From IMG/VR virus record IMGVR_UViG_3300004463_000226, positions 124,001 through 188,000 of that record: a DNA stretch of 64,000 bases; one strand, written 5' to 3'. Made by a program: the position numbers and the translations under genes. Below are positions 147-54,004 of this stretch, piece after piece; position 1 is the first letter of the stretch; each line of letters begins with the position of its first letter. Below the pieces are notes generated by a model that saw only the letters and a program-made list of their open reading frames with translations, ran no database searches and was not told the DNA's origin.

Positions 147-1169
147 TTTGTAAATTTTTATGTCTTTCTTAGGAAATCCATAATCTTTTTTCTTCTCATT
201 ATAGAATAGATTAACTTTGTTAACCCATGGACTTATTTCTTTTTCAAGAGCCTTATAGAAACCAGGATGCCTATCATTATCTGAATAAATATTTACGTCC
301 ACATTATCTATAACACCCATCTTAATAAAATACTTTATAACTGTAATGTAACCAGCACCACACATAGCTGAATAAATCATGTTTTTCTTTTCTTTGTTGT
401 ACAGGTGATAGTAAACACCGAGTATATCAAAGACACCTTCTGCCATATTAATGGTTATTTTCTTATTAGTGAGTAGATCTACTTGGTTAGGAATTGTATA
501 GAACTTTCTAGTATTATCTAGGTTCTTAAAGATACTATATTTCTCATATCTTTTATACGGGGATTCATAAACTTGTCTGAAGTTTATGAATTCATTTTTT
601 GACGTCAAGAATCCTAGATAATCATCATGTAGTGCTTTAGCCTTCTTAGGATCAACTGTTAGTCTCTCAATATCATTATATTTAAGAAACTGTCCTAATT
701 GGAATATTGATTTAAGTTCTACCATTTCCTCAAATGTAGTTTTTATTCCTAATCTACTCTCAAAGTATTTCTTCTTGAATATGTTTCTTGCATCATCTGG
801 ATCTGGTGATGGTACTTTGAAATCAAATTCATTATTAATAACTCCAAGATGATATTTCATATTCTTCATAGCCACTTTATTATAACGTATAAGTCCACTA
901 TTTAAACTTAAATCATTGATATCTAATGAACGTAATACAGAAGGTGTGAGGATACCTGATGTATCGCACCTATGGCACATAAACAATACAGGTTCATCCT
1001 CACTCATATTTACCTTGATATACAAATGCGTACTCTCAGCGCTTTTACGACTATCACCACAGAATGTACAACGAATAGCAACGAGGGAATCGTTGACTTT
1101 GTGTCTTGGATGTATACCCATCAACTCTTCCCATAATGCTATCTTAAACTCTTCTGTGTTAGTTCTCAT
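132..1169 (-). CDS. DNA primase (T4 gp61-like; Zn finger + TOPRIM)
   Basis: N-terminal CTFC..H..CHRC zinc finger; TOPRIM motifs MAEGVFD and YSDND; stop of upstream AAA gene overlaps start (TAATG). Confidence 0.85.
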   Translation of the reverse strand: MRTNTEEFKIALWEELMGIHPRHKVNDSLVAIRCTFCGDSRKSAESTHLYIKVNMSEDEPVLFMCHRCDTSGILTPSVLRSLDINDLSLNSGLIRYNKVAMKNMKYHLGVINNEFDFKVPSPDPDDARNIFKKKYFESRLGIKTTFEEMVELKSIFQLGQFLKYNDIERLTVDPKKAKALHDDYLGFLTSKNEFINFRQVYESPYKRYEKYSIFKNLDNTRKFYTIPNQVDLLTNKKITINMAEGVFDILGVYYHLYNKEKKNMIYSAMCGAGYITVIKYFIKMGVIDNVDVNIYSDNDRHPGFYKALEKEISPWVNKVNLFYNEKKKDYGFPKKDIKIYKERIS

Positions 1170-2524
1170 TAAAACTCATCATCGTCATCGTAGTCATCAT
1201 CCATGACAGGTGCACTTACTTTAATACGACGACCATGTTTGTATGCTTCATGAGCTTCAGCATGTTCAGCTTTGTTGTTATTGATTGTTTCGCTGGTTTT
1301 CTCTAGTGCTTCTTCGATACTCATATCTGGATTAAGAGCTAATAGATATTGAGTACCAGTCATGATTTCTTTCAAGCTTGCCATTGGTAAATCATCGCTG
1401 AACTTAGTAAACAATTCAACTACTGCTTTATTAGAATCCTTCTTACTGTCATCTTTAAACGTTTTGTACTCAGCTAACAACTCACCAATCTTACGGCTTT
1501 CAAAGAATGCGCGACGAGTTGCTTCGGATGGATTACCGATTTTATAAGTACGGTCAAAGCGTCCAGAACGATTCATAAAGGCTGGATCAATCTGCTCAGG
1601 GTAGTTAGTAGTACCAATGAAATATACGCCTGATTTGATATCTACACCGTCCAGAATGTTAAGGAAATCAGAACGATTAGAAGATGTGATCAGGGAATCT
1701 AAGTCTTCAATGATAATAATGGCTTGCTTCCCGTCAAGAGATTTAATCAACGCCGACAAGATACGTGTTACATTATTAACGTTCGGGTTGATTACAATTT
1801 TACTGATGCCCTCTATAGAGCGAATGATTTCACGGATCATAGAACTTTTTCCGTTACCTGGAGTACCATATAAGATAATACCTCGCTTATAGGCAATCTC
1901 CATTTTGTCATACATTGTTTTTGTTTCTTTCTTGAAGAATGTGAAGATGTCTTGCATAACTTGAACGATTGTAGATTCCTCATCAAAGACGAGCTTCTCT
2001 TTATCAATCTTCTTCTTAGCTACATCAGCAGGTTTCATGCTGTCACCAGTTGCTTCAGATACTTCAATATATTCACGCTTACTGCAATCAAAGTCAATGT
2101 CACGGAATAGATTAGCACGGCTATCTTGCTGAAGAATCGGTTTAGATTTCTTAGAGAACTTCTTCAGCTTACTAGTGTCAATCAAGAATGAGCATTGAAT
2201 TACATAGCGGTCAATAGAATAAAACGCAATTGCGTTGATCTTCTTAGATATTGCAATGCGTTGGAAAATTTCATAGTTGTTTGTAATATCATAGCCATCA
2301 ACTACTTCTGGCTGTGGTAAATCTTCTGGATAGTCGTATACATTACCGATATCCTTAAATTTGAAAGCATGAAGAAGATTCTTAATAATCTCCTCGTTAT
2401 ATACACGGAAGTTAATGCGAGTATACTCGCCTTCTTCCAAATAGACATCGTAATCTAAAACATGATTAACCAGTCGTAATAATTTTAATTCCATATCTTT
2501 TGTCATTTCAGTTCCCATTGCCAT
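1169..2524 (-). CDS. AAA+ ATPase (single classical AAA domain, BCS1/FtsH-like, no protease or TM domain)
   Basis: Walker A GTPGNGKS, Walker B IIIIEDLD, SRH TTNYPEQIDPAFMNRSGRFD; acidic C-tail. Confidence 0.85.
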   Translation of the reverse strand: MAMGTEMTKDMELKLLRLVNHVLDYDVYLEEGEYTRINFRVYNEEIIKNLLHAFKFKDIGNVYDYPEDLPQPEVVDGYDITNNYEIFQRIAISKKINAIAFYSIDRYVIQCSFLIDTSKLKKFSKKSKPILQQDSRANLFRDIDFDCSKREYIEVSEATGDSMKPADVAKKKIDKEKLVFDEESTIVQVMQDIFTFFKKETKTMYDKMEIAYKRGIILYGTPGNGKSSMIREIIRSIEGISKIVINPNVNNVTRILSALIKSLDGKQAIIIIEDLDSLITSSNRSDFLNILDGVDIKSGVYFIGTTNYPEQIDPAFMNRSGRFDRTYKIGNPSEATRRAFFESRKIGELLAEYKTFKDDSKKDSNKAVVELFTKFSDDLPMASLKEIMTGTQYLLALNPDMSIEEALEKTSETINNNKAEHAEAHEAYKHGRRIKVSAPVMDDDYDDDDEF

Positions 2525-3003
2525 TATCGCAACATCCTTTCGTTTCTAAGACTATCGTAGAAAATATGTGGTCTCATTGGATCCATAACTCCAAAGTAGA
2601 TATAGTCTCCTTTAGCTATCTCATCGAGACTAAGCATTTTGTTTACTTTTTGATAAATATAATAATGATACTCAAACTGGTTCTGACTTATCTTATCTAA
2701 AATATAAGAGTCAGCATAATCAATTACTCTATAATACTCACCCCTCTCAAAGTAATAGCGATTACCATCGTATTCAAATTGATCACGTTTATAATCTTCA
2801 TCGTAATAAAAGTTTACCTCTAGATAGTTATGTAAGTCTCTGACTCCATAAAACTCTGCTATTTTTTCCTTATCTTTATATAAGTGATATTTGCTTTCGA
2901 GATACTTATAATTTAAATTCCTTTGCTTCATCATCTTATGACATTCTTTCAACATCCACTCGGACTCTATCATTAAGTCACCTCCTATGTTTATTTCATA
3001 CAT
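2524..3003 (-). CDS. hypothetical protein (two possible in-frame starts, 3003 and 2973)
   Basis: ORF; both ATGs preceded by AGGAGG. Confidence 0.75.
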   Translation of the reverse strand: MYEINIGGDLMIESEWMLKECHKMMKQRNLNYKYLESKYHLYKDKEKIAEFYGVRDLHNYLEVNFYYDEDYKRDQFEYDGNRYYFERGEYYRVIDYADSYILDKISQNQFEYHYYIYQKVNKMLSLDEIAKGDYIYFGVMDPMRPHIFYDSLRNERMLR

Positions 3004-3011
3004 ATTCCTCC

Positions 3012-3023
3012 TATAATAAAGTT
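3012..3023 (-). promoter_or_regulatory. putative variant promoter AACT-N6-TA
   Basis: AACTTTATTATA ahead of hypothetical-AAA-primase operon. Confidence 0.55.
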
Positions 3024-3072
3024 GTACCACTTATAAAAAGTAACATCACTAGCAAATGCTAGTGCCATTTTA

Positions 3073-4119
3073 TTAATAATATTCAAGATGTACTTCTCGT
3101 CTAATTCTTTGTGCGTCGTTAAAGCACATTCTACATGCATTCATAAACCACGCATCATCAAGTCCCATTTCTTTATATGGAACTTTTATTATGACTATAT
3201 CATTGGCGGAATTTATCTTAATCTGCTCTCTTAATTGATCAATAGTTAAATCAAACATCTCTGGTTTCCAGCACAATCCTTGCTCTTGCATTCTAAATCC
3301 AAATGCAGCAGATTCATTTGTTTCAGGATCTCCTAATGTAGTTGTAAATATTCTACATGGTTTTATACCTGAAGTTTTTTCATTACGCATCTTGTACATA
3401 GCAGGAGCAGATGATTCAATAATCTCACCAACAAAAGGTATGTGCTCAAAGTCGTCAAAGTACTGAATAGTACCCACCGCTTCATTACCCATTTGCTCAG
3501 CAGTTTCTCTATCCTTAGGATTCTCAATCTGTCTAATAACATTGCGCGATAAGAAGTTTTCCATAGTTGTTCTTTTATGGACTACCATATTCATAATGGT
3601 AGACAGATAGTCAGGAAGTATTGCTACTTGGCTAAGAGTCCTAGACATATTATTATAAAACCCACTAAACGAAGAAGCCATGTATCTAAACTCAGTAGTA
3701 GTGCCACCAAACATAAATAACCAGTGAAGTAAGGTATTGTAACTCGCCCTCCTATATGTTTGATATGGATATACAGAATAATGATCAATACCATTTAACG
3801 TGCAATAGATTGAAGCAAGATTTGCTAAGTGTAGTACGAATGGTGTTCCTCCTTCACCACCTTGTTCAGGTATAGCAACACATTCACGTAAATAATACCA
3901 TGGATTAATAATTATTTCTTGGATAATCTTTTGCTTTGTTTCAATGCTAAGATTATCATCAAATGGATTGACATACTGTAAGCTAGGATCATATAACTTT
4001 AGGAAAAACATATTGTTTTTAACACCCATGTCCTTAAGTTTAATGCTTAACTTAAGAAAAGATTCATTGGTAGTGTTAATTTGATAAACAAATCTTTTTG
4101 TCCTATTCAATTTCTCCAC
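3073..4119 (-). CDS. terminase large subunit ATPase-domain paralog, degenerate Walker A, no nuclease domain
   Basis: Colinear with residues ~1-355 of TerL at 36982 (identical KNNMFFLKLYD, INPWYxLRECVxIPEQGG, GIDHY, CRIFT); Walker A PRQKGKT replaced by PYQTYRR. Confidence 0.9.
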   Translation of the reverse strand: MEKLNRTKRFVYQINTTNESFLKLSIKLKDMGVKNNMFFLKLYDPSLQYVNPFDDNLSIETKQKIIQEIIINPWYYLRECVAIPEQGGEGGTPFVLHLANLASIYCTLNGIDHYSVYPYQTYRRASYNTLLHWLFMFGGTTTEFRYMASSFSGFYNNMSRTLSQVAILPDYLSTIMNMVVHKRTTMENFLSRNVIRQIENPKDRETAEQMGNEAVGTIQYFDDFEHIPFVGEIIESSAPAMYKMRNEKTSGIKPCRIFTTTLGDPETNESAAFGFRMQEQGLCWKPEMFDLTIDQLREQIKINSANDIVIIKVPYKEMGLDDAWFMNACRMCFNDAQRIRREVHLEYY

Positions 4120-4133
4120 TCCCTTTCTTTTTC

Positions 4134-4145
4134 TATGTAAAAGTT
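4134..4145 (-). promoter_or_regulatory. putative variant promoter AACT-N6-TA
   Basis: AACTTTTACATA ahead of TerL ATPase paralog. Confidence 0.5.
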
Positions 4146-4158
4146 CTTTCGTTTATAA

Positions 4159-4641
4159 TTATTCATATATTGGTATATATTTTTTAGCAGCACACTCTTT
4201 TTCATAATCATGTCTCAGGTACACAAGAATATCACGTATGTACTTATCAGATTTTCCTTTCTTTTGAAGTGCGTTATTGACATCTTCCCTATCTTTATAA
4301 CCTTGAGTGACTAGATAATCATTAAAAGTAAACTTCTCTTCTTCCTTAACAGATTCTTCTTTGGTCTCTTCTATCTCAACATCGGATTTATATCCGTTGT
4401 TTAATACTCCTACAACAATATTCATGCAAGTAATAACTTCCCACTCCTTCTCACCCCAATTAAATCTCTCAGCAAATTCTTTCTTTATACCTTCAGGAAT
4501 TTCTGGGCTATTAGAATCTTCATCAGTACCATTCCAACCAACAACTATACCATACAGGAAAGCATCTAATTCATTTTGTCCGAAATCCTTAGCTCCGAAA
4601 ACAATCTTGTCTTTAATACGATCAATCATGTTCATTCTCAT
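4159..4641 (-). CDS. hypothetical protein
   Basis: ORF with SD GAAGGAG; start could be 4635. Confidence 0.75.
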   Translation of the reverse strand: MRMNMIDRIKDKIVFGAKDFGQNELDAFLYGIVVGWNGTDEDSNSPEIPEGIKKEFAERFNWGEKEWEVITCMNIVVGVLNNGYKSDVEIEETKEESVKEEEKFTFNDYLVTQGYKDREDVNNALQKKGKSDKYIRDILVYLRHDYEKECAAKKYIPIYE

Positions 4642-4849
4642 TTTCTCCTTCAGTAATCTCTAATGTAACAGTATGAGTGTATTCACCATCATTAATAGCT
4701 ATTGTTTTACCATTGATAAATTCTTGAAGCTGCTCTTGAGTCATCTTTAGAGTATCAGCACCCCAGCCTTGCTTATGAAATTCATTAATTGCTTCATCAG
4801 TACTCTCTATCATTTCAACTGTTGATAATTCAGAAGTATCTATTCTCAT
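4622..4849 (-). CDS. hypothetical protein
   Basis: ORF with SD, in operon orientation. Confidence 0.75.
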   Translation of the reverse strand: MRIDTSELSTVEMIESTDEAINEFHKQGWGADTLKMTQEQLQEFINGKTIAINDGEYTHTVTLEITEGENENEHD

Positions 4850-4864
4850 TTTAATATCTCCTCA

Positions 4865-5308
4865 TTAATGTATTATAACTCCATCATTTGAATTGCTCAG
4901 TAAATGAATAATGTCTATTGCTTTAGAAATACTCATATTCATTTCATGTATATCTCCTCCTTTTTCAACAACTTCCTGATACATGTTTTTATTCTCAAGA
5001 ACATATTCCAGACCAGCACGAAGAACATTACTAAACGCCCAGATAAAAGTATTTTGTGCATTCAATCTAGATATATATAGACAGATTGGTTTATATAACT
5101 TATATTCTTCAGTAACACCTTTTTCATAATACCCGAACTTCATTGTAAACAGCATAGACTTTCCTTCTTTAGTTGTTATTTTAACAACCTCTTCCAATAT
5201 AGAGCCAGTGGGTATTAGATCTCTCCTAACTCGTATAAATAGTTCCCCTTTCTTATCTGAACCAACAGATATTGTAGTAAGAATCTCGCTCGAAATTCTT
5301 TCATTCAT
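4865..5308 (-). CDS. hypothetical early protein
   Basis: ORF, SD AGGAGG, early motif at 5345-5354. Confidence 0.75.
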   Translation of the reverse strand: MNERISSEILTTISVGSDKKGELFIRVRRDLIPTGSILEEVVKITTKEGKSMLFTMKFGYYEKGVTEEYKLYKPICLYISRLNAQNTFIWAFSNVLRAGLEYVLENKNMYQEVVEKGGDIHEMNMSISKAIDIIHLLSNSNDGVIIH

Positions 5309-5344
5309 ATTATAACCTCCTAATTATTAATTGATTACCTTAAT

Positions 5345-5354
5345 ATAATATATA
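5345..5354 (-). promoter_or_regulatory. putative early promoter motif TATATATTAT
   Basis: Intergenic, ahead of 4865-5308; motif recurs at operon heads. Confidence 0.65.
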
Positions 5355-5373
5355 ATAAAAAAGGTTATTAAAT

Positions 5374-5393
5374 GGGATGACTTGCGTCATCCC
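5374..5393 (-). terminator. hairpin terminator
   Basis: gggatgac-ttgc-gtcatccc. Confidence 0.6.
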
Positions 5394-5401
5394 CCACTTA
5401 T

Positions 5402-6898
5402 TTATAACTGATTTAAGAAGTTCAAAAACTCATCCGATAATATGTCTGGATTATGAACTTCTAGCTTGTCCCCGAGCTTATCATCATTATCATAATCTAC
5501 AATTGTGAAAGTTGTATTTATAATTGTAGATAGTAGATTTAAGATGAGATTAGATTTCTTTAATTCTTCTAGTGTAGAAAACTTTTCATTCACTAGAGTT
5601 TGATAGATCGCTGAGTTCTCAATTTTCATTAAGAACTTTTGATTCTGAATTGTACGTTTGTTTAACTTCTCTACATTACCAGTCAGAATTTCTGGTAAAT
5701 ATACTAAACCTTGAAGCTGTAGTCTTCTCTTAAGCAATACTAACAACTTCAGATATTGTTTTCGTGTTAATAGATTAAGGTCACGATATCCACCGAAATA
5801 TTTTGCATAATAGTAATAAACCAATTGCACTTGGAATTTATTAATCTTATGATGCTTTTTATAGAATTCAATTTCCTCTTTCGGGATATCAATATTCATA
5901 GACTTCTTAATCATTTTGATTGTGTTTTTGATATTGATGTTTGATAAGATGACAAGTGATTCATCAATCTTATACGAGTTCATCTCCAGTTTATCTAATC
6001 CTGATAAACCTTCAGAATCTTTCTTACTGTCTAGCTGAACCAACGTGTGTTCATAAGGCTCAATAATAAAATAGCCTAGCTGACGTTCGATAACTACAGC
6101 GTTGAAGTGAATGATGTTGCTATCAAATCTGTATTTAAACATAGTCTCAGAAATGATCTTCTCTTTCAACATTTCATCTGCTTTTGTCAGTGTGTCTTCA
6201 CCTAAGATTTCACGTTGCTCCCAGATTAGGCGGTTCTTTGAAAAGCTGTTTTTAACTTTAGCCTGGATAGTAATCCATAGTTTGTTATAGATATCAATAT
6301 CTTCCGAATACATATAGAAGAGTTTTTCATAGAAGTTGAATAAAGGAACATCTTTGCCAATGTTGTAAGTATTGATATAATGAAACAGTATCGGCACCAT
6401 TATTTTCATAGACACAGATATCTTCATCATAATCTTAGCATGGTCGTTAGTGAATTCTAGTTGTTCTGTATATCTCTTACCATCCTTAGATGTTAGGTCA
6501 TAGAAATGGTTATCTTCAACCATATTAGATATCTTTTCCTGCATAGAATCTGTAAACACAATACTATACATGGCTTTGATAAATGCTGTAGGCGACTTGA
6601 TCTTTGTCTTCTTATTGTCAATAAGAAACTTCATTTTCAAGTAAGCCATGACTAGCTCTTTTTCTTGGTCATAGAAATTAATGAAGTAATTAATGTAATT
6701 CGTTATATCCCCTAAACGTTTTACATAAGATTCCTTCTTGATTACAAATGTTTTAATTGCACTGATATCTTGTTGATAGATCTCCTCAAATGGAATGATG
6801 ACTAGCTTACCATCATAGTAAACGTATTTCTGGTCATCGCGTGGTTTCCAGCTATCAACTCTACATATAATTTCTTTATCCATTATCCCCAACACCAA
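5402..6898 (-). CDS. probable sigma-like promoter-specificity subunit of non-virion RNAP (AR9 gp226 / phiKZ gp68-like)
   Basis: 498 aa helical protein; early promoter directly upstream like the other nvRNAP genes; two genes downstream of the chaperonin, matching recalled AR9 order gp228-gp227-gp226; no motif-level proof. Confidence 0.55.
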   Translation of the reverse strand: MVLGIMDKEIICRVDSWKPRDDQKYVYYDGKLVIIPFEEIYQQDISAIKTFVIKKESYVKRLGDITNYINYFINFYDQEKELVMAYLKMKFLIDNKKTKIKSPTAFIKAMYSIVFTDSMQEKISNMVEDNHFYDLTSKDGKRYTEQLEFTNDHAKIMMKISVSMKIMVPILFHYINTYNIGKDVPLFNFYEKLFYMYSEDIDIYNKLWITIQAKVKNSFSKNRLIWEQREILGEDTLTKADEMLKEKIISETMFKYRFDSNIIHFNAVVIERQLGYFIIEPYEHTLVQLDSKKDSEGLSGLDKLEMNSYKIDESLVILSNINIKNTIKMIKKSMNIDIPKEEIEFYKKHHKINKFQVQLVYYYYAKYFGGYRDLNLLTRKQYLKLLVLLKRRLQLQGLVYLPEILTGNVEKLNKRTIQNQKFLMKIENSAIYQTLVNEKFSTLEELKKSNLILNLLSTIINTTFTIVDYDNDDKLGDKLEVHNPDILSDEFLNFLNQL

Positions 6899-6925: not shown

Positions 6926-6935
6926 ATAATATATA
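6926..6935 (-). promoter_or_regulatory. putative early promoter motif TATATATTAT
   Basis: Ahead of sigma-like gene. Confidence 0.7.
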
Positions 6936-7866: not shown

Positions 7867-9594
7867 TTAGTTTGTACCTTGGTCAGCTTTAATTGAAATG
7901 TACTGGTTACTGCTCAATAATAATGCAACGATAGACGTAGCAGCACGTAAGATTTCAACATCTGTATGACAAGGGTTAATTACATCAGCCGAATAAGTAT
8001 CTGTGATTAAATCATAGCACAGTTCCTTTTCAATGGCTTCATCTACAATTCCATGTAGGAATGCTTCTGGCTCTGTAGTGTATTTTCTACCTAATACTTT
8101 AGTAAATACCTCACAGAAAGCTGCACGTAGAAGCATAAGAATGTTTTGCTCAACGCATACTTCTTTGTATTGTGTTTCAAGAAGATGGTCGATTGCAATA
8201 GGAATAATAAGGTTTCCACCAATATTATATCCATAGTGATAAGCTGATTCACATGCTTTAACAGCATCTTCAACTAGATCATAATTACTTGCTTTTTCAA
8301 GCCCAGATTGTCCACCAACATGAATAACACCCATGATTCCTTTTAGCTTAGATAGACGTTTCTTTACTTCATATAGCTGGGAATCAACGATATTCAACTC
8401 TTGGTGAGTTTGCTCAAGTTTGCTGAACTTAGCGCGAGCATCACGCAATGCTACTTGATACATTTCCTCATTGCGGTTATAGAAACCTCTAATAAGTGTT
8501 GTATCTGGTCCAACAGCAATACTATCTACTTGACCAAGGAATGAAGATATATCTGGTACTTTTTCAGGATCTTCAGAATTAAATGCATATACATCAGTAT
8601 CACGAATAATCATACCACCAGTCATGATAGCAAAATCATTGAACTGTTCTTGGAATAGATTACTTGATAACATAGCGCGTGTATATACAACTGCTGTAGT
8701 TCCATGTTGATGCATTTGTTGATTCGCTTGAGTGCGAATATGGTTAAGCATAAATGAATCGAAGTGTGGTGCAATTACCACTAAGCGACGACCTTCGTGA
8801 ACTGCAAGAGACATTGCTTTATAGATGATTGTATTGTAGTGCGACTCAAGGTCAACCTTATGGTCGAACATTAGAATCAGCGGCTTGTTAATGTTACAGA
8901 TTCCATCATCATTGGTTGCATAGATTGCATCTAGGTACGTAATTAAGGCTTTATAGCCTTCAACGATTTCATATGTAGTCTTTGCAGACCGAGCTTTAAT
9001 GAACTCAATAGATGGATTTTCTGTTTCTTTGTAAATAGTGCGGATGATATCTGAAACCTCAGTATCGCCGTTAGTTGAAATCATCGCTAAACGATAGATT
9101 TCATCAAGATCTGGAGACCCAGCCGCATCAATTTTAGTAGAGCGATTAAGAACTTCGCCTGTAATAGATTCTACTGCACGTTTAAGAGAATCAATTACTT
9201 CTTTAGGGCGAACCTTCTTAAGTTGCTCGCTACTTTCAAGTTTTTTAAGAATAGAGTTAGCTGCTACGATAGAAGATGTACTACCGTCACCAACTTTAAT
9301 TACAACTTGTGCGCTGATATTAACCAGCAGTTGAAGAAGGTTTTGCTCTGTTGGATCGTCAAATGAAATCTTTTTAAGGATATTCCAGCCGTCCTTTGTA
9401 ATATGCATTTCACCGAATTTTTCAATGATAGCTGTAGCACCGTAAGGTCCTAATGTATTAGTTAGCATAGTTGCAACCTGATCAAATACGTTGCGAACGC
9501 GTGCTCTAAATTGGGTCTCTTCAATAACATTCCAGTTTAATGACTTTTTATAGTTTTTTGGTAAAAAAGTTTCACTTAAAGTAGGTTCAGCCAT
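7867..9594 (-). CDS. groEL: GroEL-like phage chaperonin
   Basis: TLGPYG, ITKDGWNIL, KVGDGSTS, EDAVKA motifs; 575 aa; no GGM tail. Confidence 0.93.
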   Translation of the reverse strand: MAEPTLSETFLPKNYKKSLNWNVIEETQFRARVRNVFDQVATMLTNTLGPYGATAIIEKFGEMHITKDGWNILKKISFDDPTEQNLLQLLVNISAQVVIKVGDGSTSSIVAANSILKKLESSEQLKKVRPKEVIDSLKRAVESITGEVLNRSTKIDAAGSPDLDEIYRLAMISTNGDTEVSDIIRTIYKETENPSIEFIKARSAKTTYEIVEGYKALITYLDAIYATNDDGICNINKPLILMFDHKVDLESHYNTIIYKAMSLAVHEGRRLVVIAPHFDSFMLNHIRTQANQQMHQHGTTAVVYTRAMLSSNLFQEQFNDFAIMTGGMIIRDTDVYAFNSEDPEKVPDISSFLGQVDSIAVGPDTTLIRGFYNRNEEMYQVALRDARAKFSKLEQTHQELNIVDSQLYEVKKRLSKLKGIMGVIHVGGQSGLEKASNYDLVEDAVKACESAYHYGYNIGGNLIIPIAIDHLLETQYKEVCVEQNILMLLRAAFCEVFTKVLGRKYTTEPEAFLHGIVDEAIEKELCYDLITDTYSADVINPCHTDVEILRAATSIVALLLSSNQYISIKADQGTN

Positions 9595-18767: not shown

Positions 18768-18777
18768 ATAATATATA
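18768..18777 (-). promoter_or_regulatory. putative early promoter motif
   Basis: Heads operon containing ClpX-ZBD and polymerase C-subunit. Confidence 0.7.
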
Positions 18778-20123: not shown

Positions 20124-20133
20124 ATAATATATA
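20124..20133 (-). promoter_or_regulatory. putative early promoter motif
   Basis: Intergenic, ahead of 19449-20090. Confidence 0.7.
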
Positions 20134-21483: not shown

Positions 21484-21493
21484 ATAATATATA
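21484..21493 (-). promoter_or_regulatory. putative early promoter motif
   Basis: Intergenic, ahead of 20750-21442. Confidence 0.7.
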
Positions 21494-35735: not shown

Positions 35736-36971
35736 ATGACTGTAATTACTAAAAGTCCAGATATGATATTAATGGAACAAATGTTCACCAACATTAAGTC
35801 TGGTAAAGATGTTGACATTAGCTTAAGAACTATTGAACGGGTTCTAGCACGTAACTTTGGTTTAGAGTTCAATATAACTTTGATTGATAACAAGACGAAG
35901 AATTTCTTTGGTATGAGTGTATATCCTAGTAGAAATTTAATTGATACTATGGTAGATCAAATCATTAATAAGAAAGCTCATTCTGATGTTATTGAGAAGT
36001 TATGGTCTGAAAATAAGAAATGGTATCTTGAAATTGATAGTATACTTGTTAACGACCCTTCATTAAATGCAAATCCAGCTGAAATGGTTGCTGTGTTATT
36101 GCATGAGGTTGGTCATGTAACTCAATCTAATAGAATCCCTTCTCGGATTCATAAAGTATTGAGATATGAAATAATGCAGTTATCATTATCTATGAAGAAA
36201 TTAATTAAATGGAAAAAGTGTCAAATTCTTTTTGACTTAATCTTCGCTGAGGCATGTGGATCTAAAAACTTCAGTTTACATCGTGAAATTGAAGCTGATA
36301 AATTCGCTGCTAAATTTGGCTATGGTGAGAATCTTCGTCAGTTTATTGAGAAGCTATTAACTACTCAAGGTAACTCGATGATTGATCGTAGTGAGACAGA
36401 TATGGAAAAAGATGTTAAAGCAATTGTTACATGGACATTTGTTAATATCAGTGAGCTTGAATATCGTAAGACTAAATTACGTGAAATGCTTCAGACTGAA
36501 ATTTTACAGAGTCCTAGTAAATATATCCGTAATCTTGTATTCAATATTAAAACTGTATTCTTCGGTGGCAGTGACGAAAACAGTTATAAGGAAATTATCA
36601 ATGAACAGTATCTTGTTCAACAGCACCAATCTATTGTCAAAGAGGGTCTACTCGACTTATTTGATAAATACGGTAAATTGAAAAAGATCACTCAGAGTGA
36701 TATTGATATCATTCAAATAGAGAAAGACCGTATCTCAAATGAAGATGATAAAATCTATGTATTAGATCTTATCTATGACAAACTGGATCAAATCAATGCA
36801 GGCTTACAACTCATTGATCAAAATAAAAAGGACAAAGTCGTAGTATCTAAAGATAGACTCAATGGATACAAAACACAACTAGAGAAACTTCGTAAAGAAG
36901 TGTTGGCAACTAAGATTAAGGAAAAACAGTACGGCTTATTCGTCCAATATCCTGTAGGATATGAAGGGTAG
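35736..36971 (+). CDS. late protein with zincin (HExxH) metallopeptidase-like motif
   Basis: VLLHEVGHV and EIEADKFAAKFGYG. Confidence 0.65.
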   Translation: MTVITKSPDMILMEQMFTNIKSGKDVDISLRTIERVLARNFGLEFNITLIDNKTKNFFGMSVYPSRNLIDTMVDQIINKKAHSDVIEKLWSENKKWYLEIDSILVNDPSLNANPAEMVAVLLHEVGHVTQSNRIPSRIHKVLRYEIMQLSLSMKKLIKWKKCQILFDLIFAEACGSKNFSLHREIEADKFAAKFGYGENLRQFIEKLLTTQGNSMIDRSETDMEKDVKAIVTWTFVNISELEYRKTKLREMLQTEILQSPSKYIRNLVFNIKTVFFGGSDENSYKEIINEQYLVQQHQSIVKEGLLDLFDKYGKLKKITQSDIDIIQIEKDRISNEDDKIYVLDLIYDKLDQINAGLQLIDQNKKDKVVVSKDRLNGYKTQLEKLRKEVLATKIKEKQYGLFVQYPVGYEG

Positions 36972-36981
36972 GTAATCGAAT

Positions 36982-39051
36982 ATGGTGGAGACTCCTAAAC
37001 AAAAGCGACGACCGTTTATTTATCACATTAAAACAAGAAATATTTCTTTCTTACAAACAGCTCGTGACTTAAAAGCTTTAGGTATTAAGAACAACATGTT
37101 CTTCTTAAAGCTTTATGATACGTCATTAGAATTTGTAGATCCTCATTCACCACATCTAACACACGAACAAACACTAAGAGTTATCAATGAATGTATTATC
37201 AATCCTTGGTATTTCTTACGTGAATGTGTTCGTATACCTGAGCAAGGCGGTAATGGTATCCCGTATCAATTACACCGTGCTAACTTAGCAGCAACTTTTT
37301 GTTTCTTGATGGGTATTGACCATTATTTGGTAATTCCTCGTCAGAAAGGTAAGACACAATCAACTGTTTCTTCTTTAAATTGGGCATTCCTATTCGGTAC
37401 TACAAGTTCCGAGTTCATGTTTATCAATAAACGTCAAGAGGATGCTAATAACAACCTTGACCGTCTAAAACAACAACGGGAATTACTCCCTTCATATATG
37501 CGTATGAAGGAGATTATTAACGATGACGGTAAACGTGAAGTAGGTCAAGATAACGTTAAGTCTATCACGAACCCTACAACAGGTAACAAAATTGTTACTA
37601 AACCTTCTGCCCGTTCTGTAGAAGCTGCTGAGGGATTAGGACGTGGTTGCACTCAACCAATTCAGTATTATGATGAGACCGAATTTACTCCGTTCATCAA
37701 AACAATTATTGAGGCTGCTGGTCCAGCATACAATACTGCATCGGCTAACGCTAGACGAAACAATGCGGCATATTGCCGTATCTTCACATCAACTCCTGGT
37801 GACTTAGATACACAGCCAGGGCAAGACTGTGCTCTTATCATTAATGAAACTTGTAAATGGACCGAGCAATTCTATGACTGGTCTAGAGATGATATTGAAG
37901 ATTACATTGCTAAAAACTCTGGTAATGGTATTGTCTATATCGAATACCAATACCAACAACTAGGTGATGATGAAGAATGGTTCAAACGTACTTGTCAAAC
38001 CCTATTAAATAACCCTGCTAAAATTAAGCGTGAAATTTTCTTACAACGTATGCGTGGTTCTTCTGAATCTCCATTTGAAACTGAAGATCTAAATGCTGTA
38101 CAGGAGTTAAAAGGTAAAGTATTAGAAGAAATCTTTATTAATAAATTATTCAAGTTAGATATTTATGAAAAACTTGATAGAAATAAAGTATACCTAGCTG
38201 GTATGGACTGTGCTGGAGGTCTTGGTGAGGATAATACTGCTATTACAGTAATTGATCCTTATACATTGAAACCTGTAGCTGAATTTAAATCTCCATACAT
38301 TGGTATACCTGATGCTGTTAAATTTGTACGTACAATGATTAGAAAATACATCCCTAGATGTATTATGGCTATAGAGCGAAATAACGTTGGTACAGCTATT
38401 ATTGACGGTCTTCGTGAAACAGATGTACGTGCTAATATTTACTTTGATGATTCTAAAGATTTCATTGAAGTTGATGATAAATTAGATCCGCAAGGATTCT
38501 TAGCTAGACAAGCGGCTAGACGTAAACTATACGGTGTATGGACTGGTCCTAAATCCCGTGATATCATGTTTACTATTCTAGAAGCTCATATGGCTGAATA
38601 CAAAGATAAGTTCGTTACTGAGAATATTATCAATGACTTAGTGAGTCTTATCCGTAAAAAGAATGGACGTATTGAACATGCACCAGGATTCCATGATGAC
38701 TCATTATTCTCATATCTAATTGGTCTCTATGTTTACTATCATGGTAAGAATCTACATAGATTCGGATTCGTTAGAGGTCAATTACCTGATGAAGAGCAAC
38801 AAAATAAGGGATTAACTTATGAAGAAATCTTTAATGAAATGCCTGAAGAAATGAAACAAGCTTTTGCTAACTTTAGTGTTAAAACTGAAGATGATTACAG
38901 TGCTAAGATACGGGCTGAGATAGATGCTGCTAGAAGAGAAGTTCAGTATGTAAATTCTATTCTTAAACCTACGAATCTGGCTGAAAACTTTGATGAGCTT
39001 GAATATGAAGCAGATATACCATTAAGTTTCTTCGATGATTTAAATAATTAG
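36982..39051 (+). CDS. terL: terminase large subunit
   Basis: Walker A PRQKGKT, Walker B YYDETE, IFTST, nuclease AGMDCAGGLGED, AIERNNVG, HDDS. Confidence 0.92.
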   Translation: MVETPKQKRRPFIYHIKTRNISFLQTARDLKALGIKNNMFFLKLYDTSLEFVDPHSPHLTHEQTLRVINECIINPWYFLRECVRIPEQGGNGIPYQLHRANLAATFCFLMGIDHYLVIPRQKGKTQSTVSSLNWAFLFGTTSSEFMFINKRQEDANNNLDRLKQQRELLPSYMRMKEIINDDGKREVGQDNVKSITNPTTGNKIVTKPSARSVEAAEGLGRGCTQPIQYYDETEFTPFIKTIIEAAGPAYNTASANARRNNAAYCRIFTSTPGDLDTQPGQDCALIINETCKWTEQFYDWSRDDIEDYIAKNSGNGIVYIEYQYQQLGDDEEWFKRTCQTLLNNPAKIKREIFLQRMRGSSESPFETEDLNAVQELKGKVLEEIFINKLFKLDIYEKLDRNKVYLAGMDCAGGLGEDNTAITVIDPYTLKPVAEFKSPYIGIPDAVKFVRTMIRKYIPRCIMAIERNNVGTAIIDGLRETDVRANIYFDDSKDFIEVDDKLDPQGFLARQAARRKLYGVWTGPKSRDIMFTILEAHMAEYKDKFVTENIINDLVSLIRKKNGRIEHAPGFHDDSLFSYLIGLYVYYHGKNLHRFGFVRGQLPDEEQQNKGLTYEEIFNEMPEEMKQAFANFSVKTEDDYSAKIRAEIDAARREVQYVNSILKPTNLAENFDELEYEADIPLSFFDDLNN

Positions 39052-45522: not shown

Positions 45523-47736
45523 TTATGATGCATCATCACCAGCAGCCTTTTTCGCCTCTAGAGTCTTCTGTAATTCCACTTTAGCATCCTCAAATACTTT
45601 ATCAGCATTATTCCAAGGAAGCATAGGAAGAATTTCCTTAGCAAGTTTCTTATATAAGATGTCCTTAAATATATTGTCACTATCTGACGGTGAAGCATTT
45701 TCTCCAGTCAATGTCTTAATCATAAATGCAATTACTTGGTCAGCATTACTGATTAGATCAGACATATTAGTTGTATCCAATGCTTTAGGTGCAGCTAATG
45801 AGAAATCAAACTCAGCAATTATTTCAGGAGTTAGAGTTGAAGAATACATTAGAATCTTCTGATACAACTCTGTTATAGATGGATTTAAATCCAACTGATG
45901 GTTTACTATACGGCTGAGGAATTTAGCATTTGCCATTACTAATGTCTTAGCATAATCAGCCTCGTTAATGTAGTTCATGATAACTGATGGTACGCCAGTA
46001 GCATTAATAAATGATGTACGTAACATTTCCATCAAGTCAGTATTCAGCTGAACATCTTGACCCGCTAACACATCAAATTCAATACCACGTTCTCCTGAAC
46101 GACCAATAGGCATGAATACATCTTTAGCCGCACCAACCTTAGTTACCATTGAGTTATAGTTCATTAAATCCATGAAGTTGATATTTTTCTCTTTAATAGA
46201 ACGAGCAACGTCTTGAATTTTATTTGATACGTTATTGTCTAGACCAGATTGTTTTACATAATAAATCTTCTGGTCATTTGATTTAGTGATAATAGTAATC
46301 ATCTTAAAGATTAATAATGCTAGATATAGCTTAGCATAGAATAATGAAGGTAAGATGATAGATGTTCCGTTACCATTTTCATCAGGATTTACTTTAAACT
46401 CAGTAATGTGGTCAACAGGGATAAATTGGAACTTCAACTGCTTGTTATACACATCATTATAGATTAATGAGTTCAGAATAAGATCCTTAAACTTAGCATT
46501 AGTTTCTAAGAACTTTCTATTGAAACTCTTAACAATTTTGTCTGTGATCTTAGATAAGAATGCATTTTCAGCATCTCTAATATCTGTAGACCCAGGGGTT
46601 AATTTGATATTCATACTGAAAGGAGATTTTCTAACCTTTAAATCAGTTTCATGAATATAGTAGTACCCGATAGTTTCATCCAGAACCTTAATAGGAATAA
46701 TCTTTCTAGGGTCAATCAACTTAATATAACACTCTTTAATAGAACTAAAATCATTATCCTTAGAGTTTAAGTCGACAGTTCCGTCAGCAGCCATTAATTT
46801 GGTTTTGGAATTAGATTGTTTGTCCGCAGCAGATACCTTTTTCTGGAACTTAGGAGTATCTAATAGTTCATTTAATTCAGCACCTTCTAATACTGGAATA
46901 CCCATATCTTCATTATATATCTCAATATTTTCAAGTACACCATTAAAAGAACTTGCTACTTCCTTATCAGATATCTTGATATCTACTGGAGTAGATGCTT
47001 TGAAATTTTTAGCAAAATCTACATCAACACTCTCCATAGTAGCTTTGTACTTCATTGCGTCTTTTGCTCTCTTTTCATTATGACGCTGGAATAACTTTGA
47101 GTATGGTACGGTATATACATAGTATCGACCATATTCTAATGTTTTTGGAATGATATGGCTCTGGAGCTTAGTCAATAGATTAAACTGCTTCTCCATGCTT
47201 TCAACCATACCAATGTAACTTTGTTTATCAGCATCTTCCTCTGAGGAATTTTTAAATCTAAGTGTACGAGATACGGCACTTGATAAATCATCTGAAGAAA
47301 TGATAGCATCCCTTGTTGCCATGATAGCTTCATTCAATTCAAATAACTGTGCAGATACTACACTTAAATCCTCAAATAAGATATTCTGATTACGATACCG
47401 CTCTTGAAAGAATGAGAACATATTTCCATTATCGCTTTCAAATATATCCTCAATCGTTTTAATAGGACTTCCTGCATGTTGTTCATTTTCTTGCTGATTA
47501 AAAAGCTTTACGAGGAACGTAGAAACATCATCACCAGTGAACTTAGTTAAACCCTGTATTTCCTGAAAAATTACATCATCTATGTCTTTAGCCATCTGTT
47601 GCAATTCTCTATCTCGTTTATTCGAGTTAGAACCCGATGCACCGTCCAAGAACTTAGTAACTAAATCATTTAATTTTACAAGGGGCTTTTCTACTTTCTT
47701 CACCGATGCTTTTAAATCATTATCCTTTTTAGCCAC
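45523..47736 (-). CDS. portal protein
   Basis: 737 aa; KIYYV, DVFMPIGRSG..IEFDVLAG, ATGVPS patterns as in T4 gp20-like portals; late motif upstream. Confidence 0.8.
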   Translation of the reverse strand: MAKKDNDLKASVKKVEKPLVKLNDLVTKFLDGASGSNSNKRDRELQQMAKDIDDVIFQEIQGLTKFTGDDVSTFLVKLFNQQENEQHAGSPIKTIEDIFESDNGNMFSFFQERYRNQNILFEDLSVVSAQLFELNEAIMATRDAIISSDDLSSAVSRTLRFKNSSEEDADKQSYIGMVESMEKQFNLLTKLQSHIIPKTLEYGRYYVYTVPYSKLFQRHNEKRAKDAMKYKATMESVDVDFAKNFKASTPVDIKISDKEVASSFNGVLENIEIYNEDMGIPVLEGAELNELLDTPKFQKKVSAADKQSNSKTKLMAADGTVDLNSKDNDFSSIKECYIKLIDPRKIIPIKVLDETIGYYYIHETDLKVRKSPFSMNIKLTPGSTDIRDAENAFLSKITDKIVKSFNRKFLETNAKFKDLILNSLIYNDVYNKQLKFQFIPVDHITEFKVNPDENGNGTSIILPSLFYAKLYLALLIFKMITIITKSNDQKIYYVKQSGLDNNVSNKIQDVARSIKEKNINFMDLMNYNSMVTKVGAAKDVFMPIGRSGERGIEFDVLAGQDVQLNTDLMEMLRTSFINATGVPSVIMNYINEADYAKTLVMANAKFLSRIVNHQLDLNPSITELYQKILMYSSTLTPEIIAEFDFSLAAPKALDTTNMSDLISNADQVIAFMIKTLTGENASPSDSDNIFKDILYKKLAKEILPMLPWNNADKVFEDAKVELQKTLEAKKAAGDDAS

Positions 47737-51802: not shown

Positions 51803-51812
51803 ATAATATATA
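51803..51812 (-). promoter_or_regulatory. putative early promoter motif
   Basis: Ahead of polymerase N-subunit. Confidence 0.7.
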
Positions 51813-53994: not shown

Positions 53995-54004
53995 ATAATA
54001 TATA
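53995..54004 (-). promoter_or_regulatory. putative early promoter motif
   Basis: Intergenic, ahead of 53502-53948. Confidence 0.7.

What the first reader, a model, noticed from the sequence alone, without database searches (positions are those of the whole stretch)
3073..4119. Second, catalytically dead terminase ATPase domain 33 kb from the real terL
Seen: the 348-aa protein is colinear with the N-half of TerL (36982-39051), with an identical 11-mer (KNNMFFLKLYD) and shared INPWYxLRECVxIPEQGG, GIDHY and CRIFT. It ends (RREVHLEYY vs KREIFLQRM) exactly at the ATPase/nuclease hinge. Walker A PRQKGKT became PYQTYRR, GRG became GNE and Walker B DETE became DDFE, yet the frame is intact with its own SD and promoter-like motif. 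Known: TerL Walker A Lys/Thr and Arg are needed for ATP hydrolysis, and Avs-type STAND immune receptors sense the terminase ATPase domain. Inference: a retained pseudo-ATPase acting as an immune decoy, a packaging-motor regulator or poison for competing phages, or a repurposed replication factor.
Basis: partly seen in the sequence, partly recalled or inferred. Interest (0 to 1): 0.85.

Follow-up and report, generated by a model that had tools for sequence, protein, structure and literature searches.

The report
Dead stand-alone copy of terminase motor
This giant phage carries, besides its real DNA-packaging enzyme, a separately encoded copy of that enzyme's motor domain that keeps its shape but has lost the residues needed to burn ATP; similar unannotated dead copies have arisen several times in other giant phages, which suggests a useful but still unknown binding role.

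Summary
ORF 3073-4119 (-) is 38% identical (E 2e-80) to residues 8-355 of the real TerL (36982-39051, +). It stops at the ATPase/nuclease hinge and folds with high confidence (pLDDT 94.8) as a complete T4 gp17-type ATPase domain. Walker A Lys/Thr, the GRG arginine and the Walker B catalytic Glu are all replaced.

It is not a lone oddity. A search of 1.84 billion protein representatives found at least 31 other short (310-400 aa) TerL-N proteins with degenerate catalytic motifs, while all 27 full-length TerLs aligned with them keep every catalytic residue. A careful tree needs at least 4 independent origins. These copies evolve about twice as fast as TerL, are patchily distributed, and occur as tandem or truncated copies. 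In one lineage the copy abuts terL. A cultured Vibrio phage carries one annotated as "hypothetical protein". The N-terminal motifs and the hinge-proximal helix-loop-helix stay as conserved as in real TerLs.

In the window the gene ends a four-gene unit headed by an exact AR9-type early promoter core.

Best reading: a binding-only TerL mimic acting on the packaging machinery. The immune-decoy idea is neither supported nor excluded. Function is untested. No paper describing such proteins was found.

The parts
3073..4119 (-). PAR: stand-alone, catalytically disabled TerL ATPase-domain paralogue (348 aa from GTG 4119; more likely 345 aa from TTG 4110; stop 3075-3073)
   Evidence: ORF. 38% identity and E 2e-80 to TerL residues 8-355. 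PHROG 'terminase large subunit' hits at 3e-39 and 2e-14. AF2 model pLDDT 94.8; best PDB match is the T4 gp17 ATPase domain over 356 columns. The database gene product P0001 is 345 aa, i.e. it starts at the TTG.
4119..4126 (-). Shine-Dalgarno-like AAAGGGAG, 8 nt upstream of TTG 4110
   Evidence: Read directly from the sequence.
4134..4145 (-). AACT-TTTACA-TA, one mismatch from the AR9 late-promoter consensus AACA-(6N)-TA/G; significance uncertain
   Evidence: Sequence; consensus from PMC5312081. No exact AACA-N6-T[AG] match lies between PAR and the early motif; the only minus-strand match in 3000-5500 is at 3866, inside PAR.
5345..5354 (-). TATATATTAT followed by 6 nt and G: matches the AR9 early (virion RNA polymerase) promoter core; predicted start of the transcription unit that ends with PAR
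   Evidence: 11 exact copies in the window against 1.5 expected, and 0 of 100 shuffles reach 11. AR9 early consensus AAATATATATTAT-(6N)-G was defined experimentally (PMC5312081). No minus-strand terminator-like site lies between here and PAR.
4159..5308 (-). Three small genes of unknown function (147 aa 4865-5308, 75 aa 4622-4849, 160 aa 4159-4641), predicted to be co-transcribed upstream of PAR
   Evidence: ORFs. No PHROG or Pfam hit for the 147-aa and 160-aa ORFs; the 75-aa ORF was not scanned. No homologues next to PAR relatives in L002, L003, L006, L007, L008.
3047..3064 (-). Terminator-like hairpin (7-bp stem, 4 GC pairs) with a T-rich tail, 9 nt after the PAR stop
36982..39051 (+). The real, full-length TerL (689 aa) with intact Walker A PRQKGKT, GRG, Walker B YDE, C-motif TST and a C-terminal nuclease half
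   Evidence: (84-98% coverage matches to jumbo-phage TerLs). It sits in a tight TerL clade (100/97) that does not include PAR.

Best explanation
Shown: the gene encodes a complete TerL ATPase domain (the equivalent of T4 gp17 residues 1-360) without the nuclease domain. The Walker A Lys/Thr, the conserved GRG arginine and the Walker B catalytic Glu are replaced. It belongs to a set of short TerL-N paralogues that arose several times in jumbo phages. These evolve about twice as fast as TerL, are patchily distributed, and keep the N-terminal motifs and the C-terminal helix-loop-helix next to the hinge as strictly as real TerLs do.

Inferred: it cannot hydrolyse ATP and works by binding. It is transcribed early, from an AR9-type virion-RNA-polymerase promoter, as the last gene of a four-gene unit.

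Proposed mechanism (inference): it mimics the TerL ATPase domain at a TerL docking site, either the portal clip (contacted in T4 by the hinge helix-loop-helix) or the TerL ring itself. It would therefore occupy or enter packaging motors without driving them. That would make it a dominant-negative or timing regulator of motor assembly, aimed at co-infecting relatives or at premature assembly of its own motor.

Confidence that it is a retained non-catalytic TerL-N paralogue is about 0.9. Confidence in the packaging-interference mechanism is about 0.4; the figure given below is for the mechanism.
For: Homology and fold.

Loss of catalytic residues. All 27 live TerLs keep R119, Q120, K123, R212, G213, D222, E223 and T261. 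Of 31 short proteins, 8 keep the Lys and 5 keep the Glu.

Why these changes kill hydrolysis: every change of the lambda catalytic Glu is lethal (PMC6379665 abstract), and the T4 DE-to-ED mutant binds ATP but does not hydrolyse it (PMC9958956).

Selection on non-catalytic parts: 11 invariant and 13 near-invariant columns among 21 sequences that are about 30% identical. N18, E68, N72, W74, Y75, R78, E79, W284, D290, W324, R341, E342 and L345 are conserved equally in dead and live proteins. The 275-aa L006 copy has lost the Walker B/C-motif core yet keeps both ends.

Recurrence: at least 4 origins are forced by well-supported branches, and 0 of 200 bootstrap trees show a single origin.

Fast evolution: median terminal branch 1.54 against 0.73. 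Copies at the same locus in L006 and L007 are 33-38% identical to PAR, while their neighbours are 53-73% identical.

Patchiness and copy-number change.

Early promoter.

Precedents in T4: the portal contact lies in a helix-loop-helix by the hinge, and a peptide of it inhibits packaging (PMC9958956); motors doped with ATPase-dead subunits engage DNA less and fail more often (PMC8589836).

Link to terL: in L018-L020 a dead copy abuts the terL start.
Against: No binding, expression or phenotype data exist. A blocker of portal or ring would also threaten the phage's own packaging, and nothing here shows how that is avoided. Many of the conserved residues are hydrophobic and may only hold the fold together. 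PAR and P0002 have lost the GRG arginine that 22 of 31 family members keep, so entry into a ring is less obvious for this member. Timing is predicted from a motif borrowed from AR9, not measured. Equating the C-terminal helices with the T4 portal-binding helix-loop-helix rests on a whole-domain structural alignment, not on a complex. The main group of 24 dead proteins has weak support (63/77) and long branches, so the number of origins is uncertain in either direction.
Confidence: 0.4

Rival explanations
1. Immune decoy or shield: an early-made TerL look-alike that engages host sensors of the terminase ATPase domain (Avs-type STAND proteins or others) without triggering them, or soaks them up before the real TerL appears.
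For: Predicted early expression. Fast evolution, patchy distribution and copy-number change are typical of conflict genes. Avs1-3 sense TerL by direct binding (PMC13581612). KpAvs2 is predicted to contact the TerL ATPase domain and co-purifies with TerL (PMC11564622).
Against: In the cited work, binding of TerL activates Avs rather than blocking it, so a faithful mimic made early would more likely trigger the alarm sooner. From memory, not checked here: the published Avs3-terminase structure involves both the ATPase and the nuclease active sites. PAR has lost the first and lacks the second, which reads better as escaping recognition than as a decoy. No host, no defence system and no interaction are known for this phage.
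Confidence: 0.2
2. A positive, non-catalytic partner of the phage's own TerL: a TerS-like regulatory or assembly subunit, comparable to the non-catalytic paralogous subunits of other ring ATPases.
For: In L018-L020 the dead copy lies directly upstream of terL, the classic terS position. 22 of 31 short paralogues keep the GRG arginine, which could still act on a neighbouring subunit.
Against: It is absent at the syntenic site in the closest relative, and tblastn finds only TerL in the cultured AR9/PBS1- and S6-like phages, so it is not a core component. It evolves twice as fast as TerL. In the window it lies 33 kb from terL in a predicted early unit. PAR itself lacks the arginine.
Confidence: 0.15
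3. A scaffold repurposed for replication or transcription, for example as a partner of the neighbouring AAA+ ATPase, primase or RNA polymerase subunit.
For: The neighbours are a primase, an AAA+ ATPase, an RNA polymerase subunit and a chaperonin. The link to the AAA+ ATPase recurs in L007, to the RNA polymerase subunit and primase in L006, and to an RNA polymerase beta-like gene in L008.
Against: Seven relatives have the AAA+ ATPase with no TerL-N-like gene within 10 kb, and in L096 the RNA polymerase subunit and primase genes are adjacent without it. Other family members sit next to terL (L018) or next to a giant protein (Vibrio phage). The immediate small neighbours are not conserved.
Confidence: 0.1
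4. A functionless duplicate on its way to decay, for example a by-product of the intron and homing-endonuclease traffic that splits terL genes in this group.
For: Truncated and internally deleted copies exist (L006, Vibrio phage). An HNH endonuclease lies next to P0002. terL is split in many relatives, sometimes exactly at the hinge. Distribution is patchy.
Against: The frame is intact across dozens of clusters that are less than 50% identical. Non-catalytic columns are invariant. The predicted fold is very confident. The same kind of protein has arisen repeatedly. P0002 shares the same lesions at only 44% identity, so the dead state has persisted for a long time.
Confidence: 0.05

Closest known systems
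T4 gp17 N-terminal ATPase domain (PDB 2O0H, 2O0J, 3CPE) and TerL ATPase domains in general
   Same: Same fold over the whole domain: 356 aligned columns, Foldseek E 2e-11, probability 1.0. Profile-level sequence homology at E 2e-6. The protein ends at the same hinge.
   Different: No Walker A Lys/Thr, no catalytic Glu, no GRG arginine, no nuclease domain. It is encoded in addition to a complete TerL.
N-terminal pieces of split (intron- or endonuclease-interrupted) terL genes in AR9/PBS1-like and related jumbo phages
   Same: Similar length. Some end at the same hinge (P0003, P0005, L029, L090). This suggests a way that stand-alone TerL-N genes can arise.
   Different: Those pieces keep PRQxGKT, GRG and DE, and the remaining terL pieces follow within a few kb. 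PAR has none of these features and lies 33 kb from an uninterrupted terL.
Vibrio phage vB_pir03 QNI21149.1 (MT811961.1 188001-188966), annotated 'hypothetical protein'; a second place is also reported in Vibrio phage C-ZP2022
   Same: A second, short TerL-N-like gene beside a normal terL in a cultured jumbo phage. Walker A Lys is replaced by Arg (PRQRGRS). The N-terminal motifs are conserved.
   Different: It is more eroded: the Walker B region is deleted and the C-terminal part is unrelated. Only about 32% identical to PAR over 118 aa.
Non-catalytic paralogous subunits of ring or filament ATPases (F1 alpha beside beta, clamp-loader delta/delta-prime, Rad51 paralogues). An analogy from general knowledge, not tested here.
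   Same: A duplicated ATPase fold that has lost hydrolysis yet is retained, in those cases as a partner of the catalytic paralogue.
   Different: No evidence yet that PAR assembles with TerL. It is not universally present alongside TerL.
Experimental inhibitors of the T4 motor: the hinge helix-loop-helix peptide and ATPase-dead gp17 subunits
   Same: They show that a non-hydrolysing TerL part can compete at the portal or in the ring and impair packaging (PMC9958956; PMC8589836).
   Different: Those are laboratory constructs. PAR would be a natural, separately encoded version, and its binding has not been shown.
Ksap2, a small phage protein that triggers KpAvs2
   Same: An accessory phage protein reported to have weak structural resemblance to a TerL ATPase domain and to be seen by a terminase-sensing receptor (PMC11564622).
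   Different: No sequence relationship was tested or is expected. Ksap2 is small and comes from unrelated phages.

Membership tests
Large terminase (TerL), T4 gp17 type | ATPase-domain fold (Rossmann subdomain plus small subdomain) and sequence homology | tested here: met
   BLASTP E 2e-80 to the window's TerL. PHROG terminase families. AF2 pLDDT 94.8 with T4 gp17 as best PDB match. TM 0.9 to jumbo-phage TerL models.
Large terminase (TerL), T4 gp17 type | Walker A with the invariant Lys-Thr/Ser (PRQxxKT in this clade; SRQLGKT in gp17) | tested here: not met
   PAR has PYQTYRR. K and T/S are present in all 27 aligned live TerLs.
Large terminase (TerL), T4 gp17 type | Walker B Asp followed by the catalytic Glu | tested here: not met
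   PAR has FDD-FE where TerL has YDE-TE. The Glu is present in 27 of 27 live TerLs and 5 of 31 short paralogues.
Large terminase (TerL), T4 gp17 type | C-terminal RNase-H-like nuclease domain | tested here: not met
   The ORF stops at the hinge. No TerL-C-like sequence lies nearby; tblastn of the TerL C-half finds only terL itself.
Large terminase (TerL), T4 gp17 type | ATP hydrolysis and DNA translocation | not testable with these tools
   Needs a biochemical assay. Loss is inferred from the motif changes.
N-terminal piece of a split terL gene | Intact catalytic motifs, with the remaining terL pieces following within a few kb | tested here: not met
   The motifs are degenerate. The window's terL is uninterrupted and lies 33 kb away.
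Pseudogene | Frame disruptions or loss of constraint | tested here: not met
   The 348-codon frame is intact. Non-catalytic columns are invariant across the family. The fold prediction is confident. dN/dS was not computed because the only available pair is saturated.
Small terminase (TerS) | Gene directly upstream of terL | tested here: not met
   In the window the gene is 33 kb from terL. The gene upstream of terL is a 411-aa HExxH-motif ORF. A family member does occupy that position in L018-L020.
Small terminase (TerS) | TerS fold (N-terminal DNA-binding helix-turn-helix plus oligomerisation core) | tested here: not met
   The fold is a TerL ATPase domain.
Phage anti-defence or conflict gene (working category, not a sequence family) | Early expression, rapid evolution, patchy distribution | tested here: inconclusive
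   An early promoter core lies upstream, a prediction only. Branches are about twice as long. Presence is patchy. Copy number varies.
Phage anti-defence or conflict gene (working category, not a sequence family) | Binds or inhibits a defined host defence protein | not testable with these tools
   The host and its defence systems are unknown, and no complex-prediction tool was available.

The most novel reading that the evidence does not exclude
Jumbo phages have repeatedly evolved a new class of packaging-related protein: a stand-alone TerL ATPase-domain pseudoenzyme. It would either be a true extra component of the motor (a heteromeric ring, or a replacement for the missing TerS), or a natural dominant-negative weapon or immune mimic that exploits the most conserved protein of tailed phages.
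Probability: 0.3. Interest if true: 0.85.

Novelty: new variant of a known kind. Interest (0 to 1): 0.68.

Why it matters
TerL is the most conserved protein of tailed phages. It is the engine of genome packaging and a prime target of bacterial pattern-recognition immunity. A recurrent, separately encoded, non-catalytic copy of its motor domain would be one of three things: a new regulator of a well-studied molecular motor, a weapon in competition between phages, or a new form of molecular mimicry against immunity.

The family is currently annotated as hypothetical proteins or mislabelled as terminase. That can mislead terminase-based phage classification and genome-end prediction. At least one cultured Vibrio phage carries a related copy, so the question can be tested at the bench.

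Tried and rejected
- Pfam finds nothing for PAR, and nothing significant for the real TerL either (only sub-threshold chance hits), because this TerL clade is too divergent. PHROGs and structure were needed instead.
- No nucleotide match of the window to cultured phages.
- Synteny of the genes downstream of P0002 in L002 with the window: none.
- A single-protein locus search with the AAA+ ATPase found only the window's own contig. An alignment query was needed.
It cannot be used to count carriers or to prove absence in a genome.
- The C-terminal extensions of the two longer dead proteins (P0032, P0123) have no Pfam hit and no similarity to the nuclease domain, so they give no functional clue.
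- The ESM Atlas added only generic terminase neighbours.
- dN/dS was not attempted: the only pair with DNA in hand (PAR and P0002) is 44% identical in protein, so synonymous sites are saturated.
- Literature searches for a stand-alone or inactive TerL paralogue found nothing.
- A single origin of all dead copies was considered and rejected by the careful tree.
- A recent duplication of the window's own terL was rejected: TerL groups with other TerLs at 100/97 without PAR.
Full report
**1. The observation**

The window is part of a 234,335-bp metagenomic contig (JGI 3300004463, Ga0063356_100000001). Its GC content is 32-36%. It has no nucleotide match among cultured phages. Its TerL is at most 38% identical to those of Bacillus AR9/PBS1/BpSp-type and Staphylococcus S6-type jumbo phages.

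ORF 3073..4119 on the minus strand, here called PAR, is intact. It aligns colinearly with residues 8-355 of the 689-aa TerL at 36982..39051, with 135/355 identities and E 2e-80. PHROGs assigns both proteins to 'terminase large subunit' families; Pfam gives PAR no hit and TerL only sub-threshold chance hits. No further TerL-like fragment lies in the window.

The likelier start is TTG 4110 (345 aa). That is the start of the database gene product P0001, and AGGGAG lies 8 nt upstream of it, whereas it abuts the GTG at 4119.

**2. Fold and motifs**

An AlphaFold2 model built on a 58-sequence alignment is very confident (pLDDT 94.8, pTM 0.93).

- Its best solved match is the T4 gp17 ATPase domain over the whole length (2O0J/2O0H, 356 columns, E 2e-11).
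- The next matches are the TerL ATPase domains of P74-26, D6E, Sf6 and HK97.
- Among viral models it matches full-length jumbo-phage TerLs at TM about 0.9.

A profile of the family finds gp17 at E 2e-6. It aligns the family's PRQxGKT with gp17 SRQLGKT (Walker A), GRG with gp17 VRG, and FDE with gp17 IDE (Walker B).

PAR has PYQTYRR, GNE and FDD at these places. It stops at the hinge where gp17's ATPase domain ends, which is also where some relatives' terL genes are naturally split.

On published genetics these changes should abolish hydrolysis. Every change of the lambda catalytic Glu is lethal (PMC6379665). The T4 DE-to-ED mutant binds ATP but does not hydrolyse it (PMC9958956). 'Catalytically dead' is therefore a strong inference, not a measurement.

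**3. PAR is one of many**

A word-indexed search restricted to similar lengths found P0002 (351 aa, 44% identical). It has the same lesions (PRQQYRS, no GRG, FDDFEHIP) and the same end.

An exhaustive HMMER search of 1.84 billion representatives gave 993 hits. Sorting the top 150 by length and motifs showed a clean split:

- Every protein of about 600-1000 aa keeps PRQxxK[TS] and DE.
- About 30 proteins of 310-400 aa have degenerate motifs. The Walker Lys is often Arg (TYRT, TYRS, YRR), and DE is replaced by DD, DN or NN.

On the 58-row alignment:

| Position(s) | 27 full-length TerLs | 31 short proteins |
|---|---|---|
| R119, Q120, K123, R212, G213, D222, E223, T261 | all kept in 27/27 | variable |
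| Walker A Lys (K123) | 27 | 8 |
| Walker B catalytic Glu (E223) | 27 | 5 |
| GRG arginine (R212) | 27 | 22 |

The N-terminal motifs and the C-terminal segment before the hinge behave in the opposite way. T16, N18, S20, F21, E68, N72, W74, Y75, R78 and E79, and W284, D290, I311, W324, R341, E342 and L345, are as conserved in the dead proteins as in real TerLs. Selection has therefore kept the scaffold and its non-catalytic parts while the active site was released.

**4. Evolution**

A careful IQ-TREE analysis of 79 N-domains gave these results:

- PAR groups with P0002 and P0027 (support 96/97).
- The window's TerL sits in a tight clade of seven TerLs (100/97) without PAR. PAR is therefore not a recent copy of the resident terL.
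- The 'dead' state needs 5 changes on the tree. At least 4 are forced by well-supported branches, and none of 200 bootstrap trees shows a single origin.
- Three small groups of dead proteins nest inside different TerL clades (99/99, 98/86, 100/97).
- The main group of 24 is weakly supported (63/77) and has long branches, so the true number of origins could be higher or lower.

Dead proteins have a median terminal branch of 1.54 against 0.73 for TerLs.

At the same locus in relatives:

- L006: the RNA polymerase subunit is 73% and the primase 54% identical to the window's, but the dead paralogue is only 38% identical.
- L007: the AAA+ ATPase is 62% identical, the paralogue 33%.
- L006 holds three tandem TerL-N-like ORFs: a full one; a 275-aa copy that has lost the Walker B/C-motif core but keeps both ends; and a 96-aa N-terminal stub.
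- In L018-L020 a 327-aa dead copy abuts the start of terL.
- Seven relatives found through the AAA+ ATPase have no TerL-N-like ORF within 10 kb.
- In L096 (TerL 75% identical to the window's) the RNA polymerase subunit and primase genes are adjacent with a 57-nt gap, so the paralogue is absent from that site.

Among cultured phages, tblastn with three different family members finds only TerL itself. The exception is Vibrio phages vB_pir03 and C-ZP2022, which show a second place. For vB_pir03 I fetched the genome and located it: QNI21149.1, 321 aa, 'hypothetical protein', with Walker A PRQRGRS and the Walker B region deleted.

**5. Expression signals**

Sigma-70-like sites are not enriched (33 found, 36.8 expected).

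TATATATTAT occurs 11 times against 1.5 expected, mostly just upstream of co-oriented genes. It is the core of the experimentally defined AR9 early promoter AAATATATATTAT-(6N)-G, which is read by the injected virion RNA polymerase (PMC5312081).

One copy at 5345-5354 (-), followed by 6 nt and G, heads a unit of three small unknown genes and then PAR. No terminator-like site intervenes on that strand, and a hairpin with a T-rich tail follows the PAR stop at 3064-3047.

AACA-(6N)-TA motifs of the AR9 late type precede the genes downstream of terL (39128, 39941, 42715) and the large minus-strand gene ending at 47736. These genes were not scanned against any family library. PAR has only a one-mismatch version at 4145-4134.

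PAR is thus predicted to be early, possibly continuous. This is inference from a related phage's promoters.

**6. What it most likely does**

Shown: a retained, recurrently evolved, fast-evolving, patchily distributed, non-catalytic TerL ATPase-domain paralogue.

Inferred: it acts by binding. In T4 the ATPase ring sits on the portal, and the contact is placed in a helix-loop-helix beside the hinge. A peptide of that element inhibits packaging (PMC9958956). Motors doped with ATPase-dead subunits engage DNA less, fail more often and pause (PMC8589836). PAR ends in two conserved helices (322-331 and 336-343) at the corresponding place.

I therefore favour a TerL mimic that occupies TerL's docking site on the portal or in the ring, delaying or blocking motor assembly. 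Early expression, patchiness, speed of evolution and copy-number change fit a conflict role, for example against co-infecting relatives, better than a core role. My confidence in this mechanism is about 0.4.

Rivals:

- **Immune decoy (0.2).** Conflict-type evolution fits. However, TerL binding activates the known Avs sensors. Losing the active-site residues looks more like avoiding recognition than attracting it.
- **Positive TerS-like partner (0.15).** The terS-like position in L018 and the retained arginine in most members speak for it. Patchiness and the loss of that arginine in PAR speak against it.
- **Replication or transcription factor (0.1).** This rests on neighbourhood only, and the neighbourhood is not conserved.
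- **Decaying duplicate (0.05).** Eroded copies exist, but long-term retention and recurrence argue against it.

**7. Comparison with what is known, and novelty**

PAR is homologous to TerL but fails three defining features of a terminase: Walker A Lys/Thr, the catalytic Glu and the nuclease domain. It is not a piece of a split terL, not a TerS by fold, and not a pseudogene by frame or constraint.

Six full-text searches and the jumbo-phage comparative-genomics review (PMC7824862) gave no description of stand-alone inactive TerL-N paralogues. Database copies carry no names. I rate it a new variant of a known kind: a pseudoenzyme family derived from TerL.

**8. Limits**

- There are no expression, binding or phenotype data.
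- The host is unknown.
- Phylogeny of such fast-evolving sequences is prone to long-branch effects (warnings).

Noticed in passing
window 5345-5354, 6926-6935, 18768-18777, 20124-20133, 21484-21493, 51803-51812, 53995-54004 (all minus strand) and 4 more: TATATATTAT occurs 11 times (1.5 expected), mostly just upstream of co-oriented genes including the RNA polymerase subunit gene. It equals the core of the AR9 early promoter consensus, so this uncultured phage probably uses an AR9-like virion RNA polymerase promoter.
   Followed up: partly
window upstream of 39128, 39941, 42715 (+) and of 47736 (-): AACA-(6N)-TA motifs of the AR9 late-promoter type precede the genes downstream of terL and the large minus-strand gene ending at 47736. 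Seen by eye in the upstream sequences; enrichment was not tested and these genes were not scanned against any family library.
   Followed up: no
L006:1121-3401: A relative (RNA polymerase subunit 73% identical) has three tandem TerL-N-like ORFs between the RNA polymerase subunit and primase genes: a 275-aa copy with the Rossmann core deleted, a full 346-aa dead copy (P0016) and a 96-aa N-terminal stub.
   Followed up: partly
L018:8990-9970 (also L019, L020): A 327-aa dead TerL-N paralogue (Walker A PRFTYNM, no DE) ends about 20 nt before the start of the real 736-aa terL, i.e. in the position usually held by terS.
   Followed up: partly
L012:41001-41966 (Vibrio phage vB_pir03 MT811961.1 188001-188966, QNI21149.1): A cultured jumbo phage carries a second, eroded TerL-N-like gene annotated 'hypothetical protein', directly after a 6,417-aa giant gene. 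Vibrio phage C-ZP2022 also shows a second tblastn place, which was not inspected.
   Followed up: partly
L029, L031-L039, L044, L046, L049, L051, L066-L068, L082, L084, L086, L088, L090-L093: terL is split into two or three ORFs in many related viral contigs. The break points vary and include one exactly at the ATPase/nuclease hinge (L029; L090, L091, L093). This is consistent with intron or endonuclease insertions, as annotated for PBS1/AR9.
   Followed up: no
L002:313-1287: An HNH_3 homing-endonuclease gene lies directly upstream of the closest PAR orthologue, P0002.
   Followed up: no
window 35736-36971 (+): The 411-aa ORF that ends 10 nt before terL contains an HEVGH (HExxH) motif, suggesting a zinc metalloprotease-like protein in the place where a terS might be expected. 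It was not searched against any library.
   Followed up: no
window 1169-2524 (-); L096-L102, L007: The AAA+ ATPase (PF00004) two genes downstream of PAR has orthologues at 51-62% identity in eight other viral contigs. L099 carries two copies 8 kb apart.
   Followed up: partly
window 7867-9594 (-) and 5402-6898 (-): A phage-encoded GroEL-like chaperonin (PHROG 4e-89, Pfam Cpn60_TCP1) and a split multisubunit RNA polymerase subunit lie in the same minus-strand block as PAR.
   Followed up: no
P0032 (528 aa) and P0123 (580 aa): Two dead TerL-N proteins carry extra segments: a C-terminal tail of about 150-200 aa in both, and about 70 aa at the N-terminus of P0123. These have no Pfam hit and the tails have no similarity to the nuclease domain. 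They could be fusions or gene-calling artefacts.
   Followed up: partly
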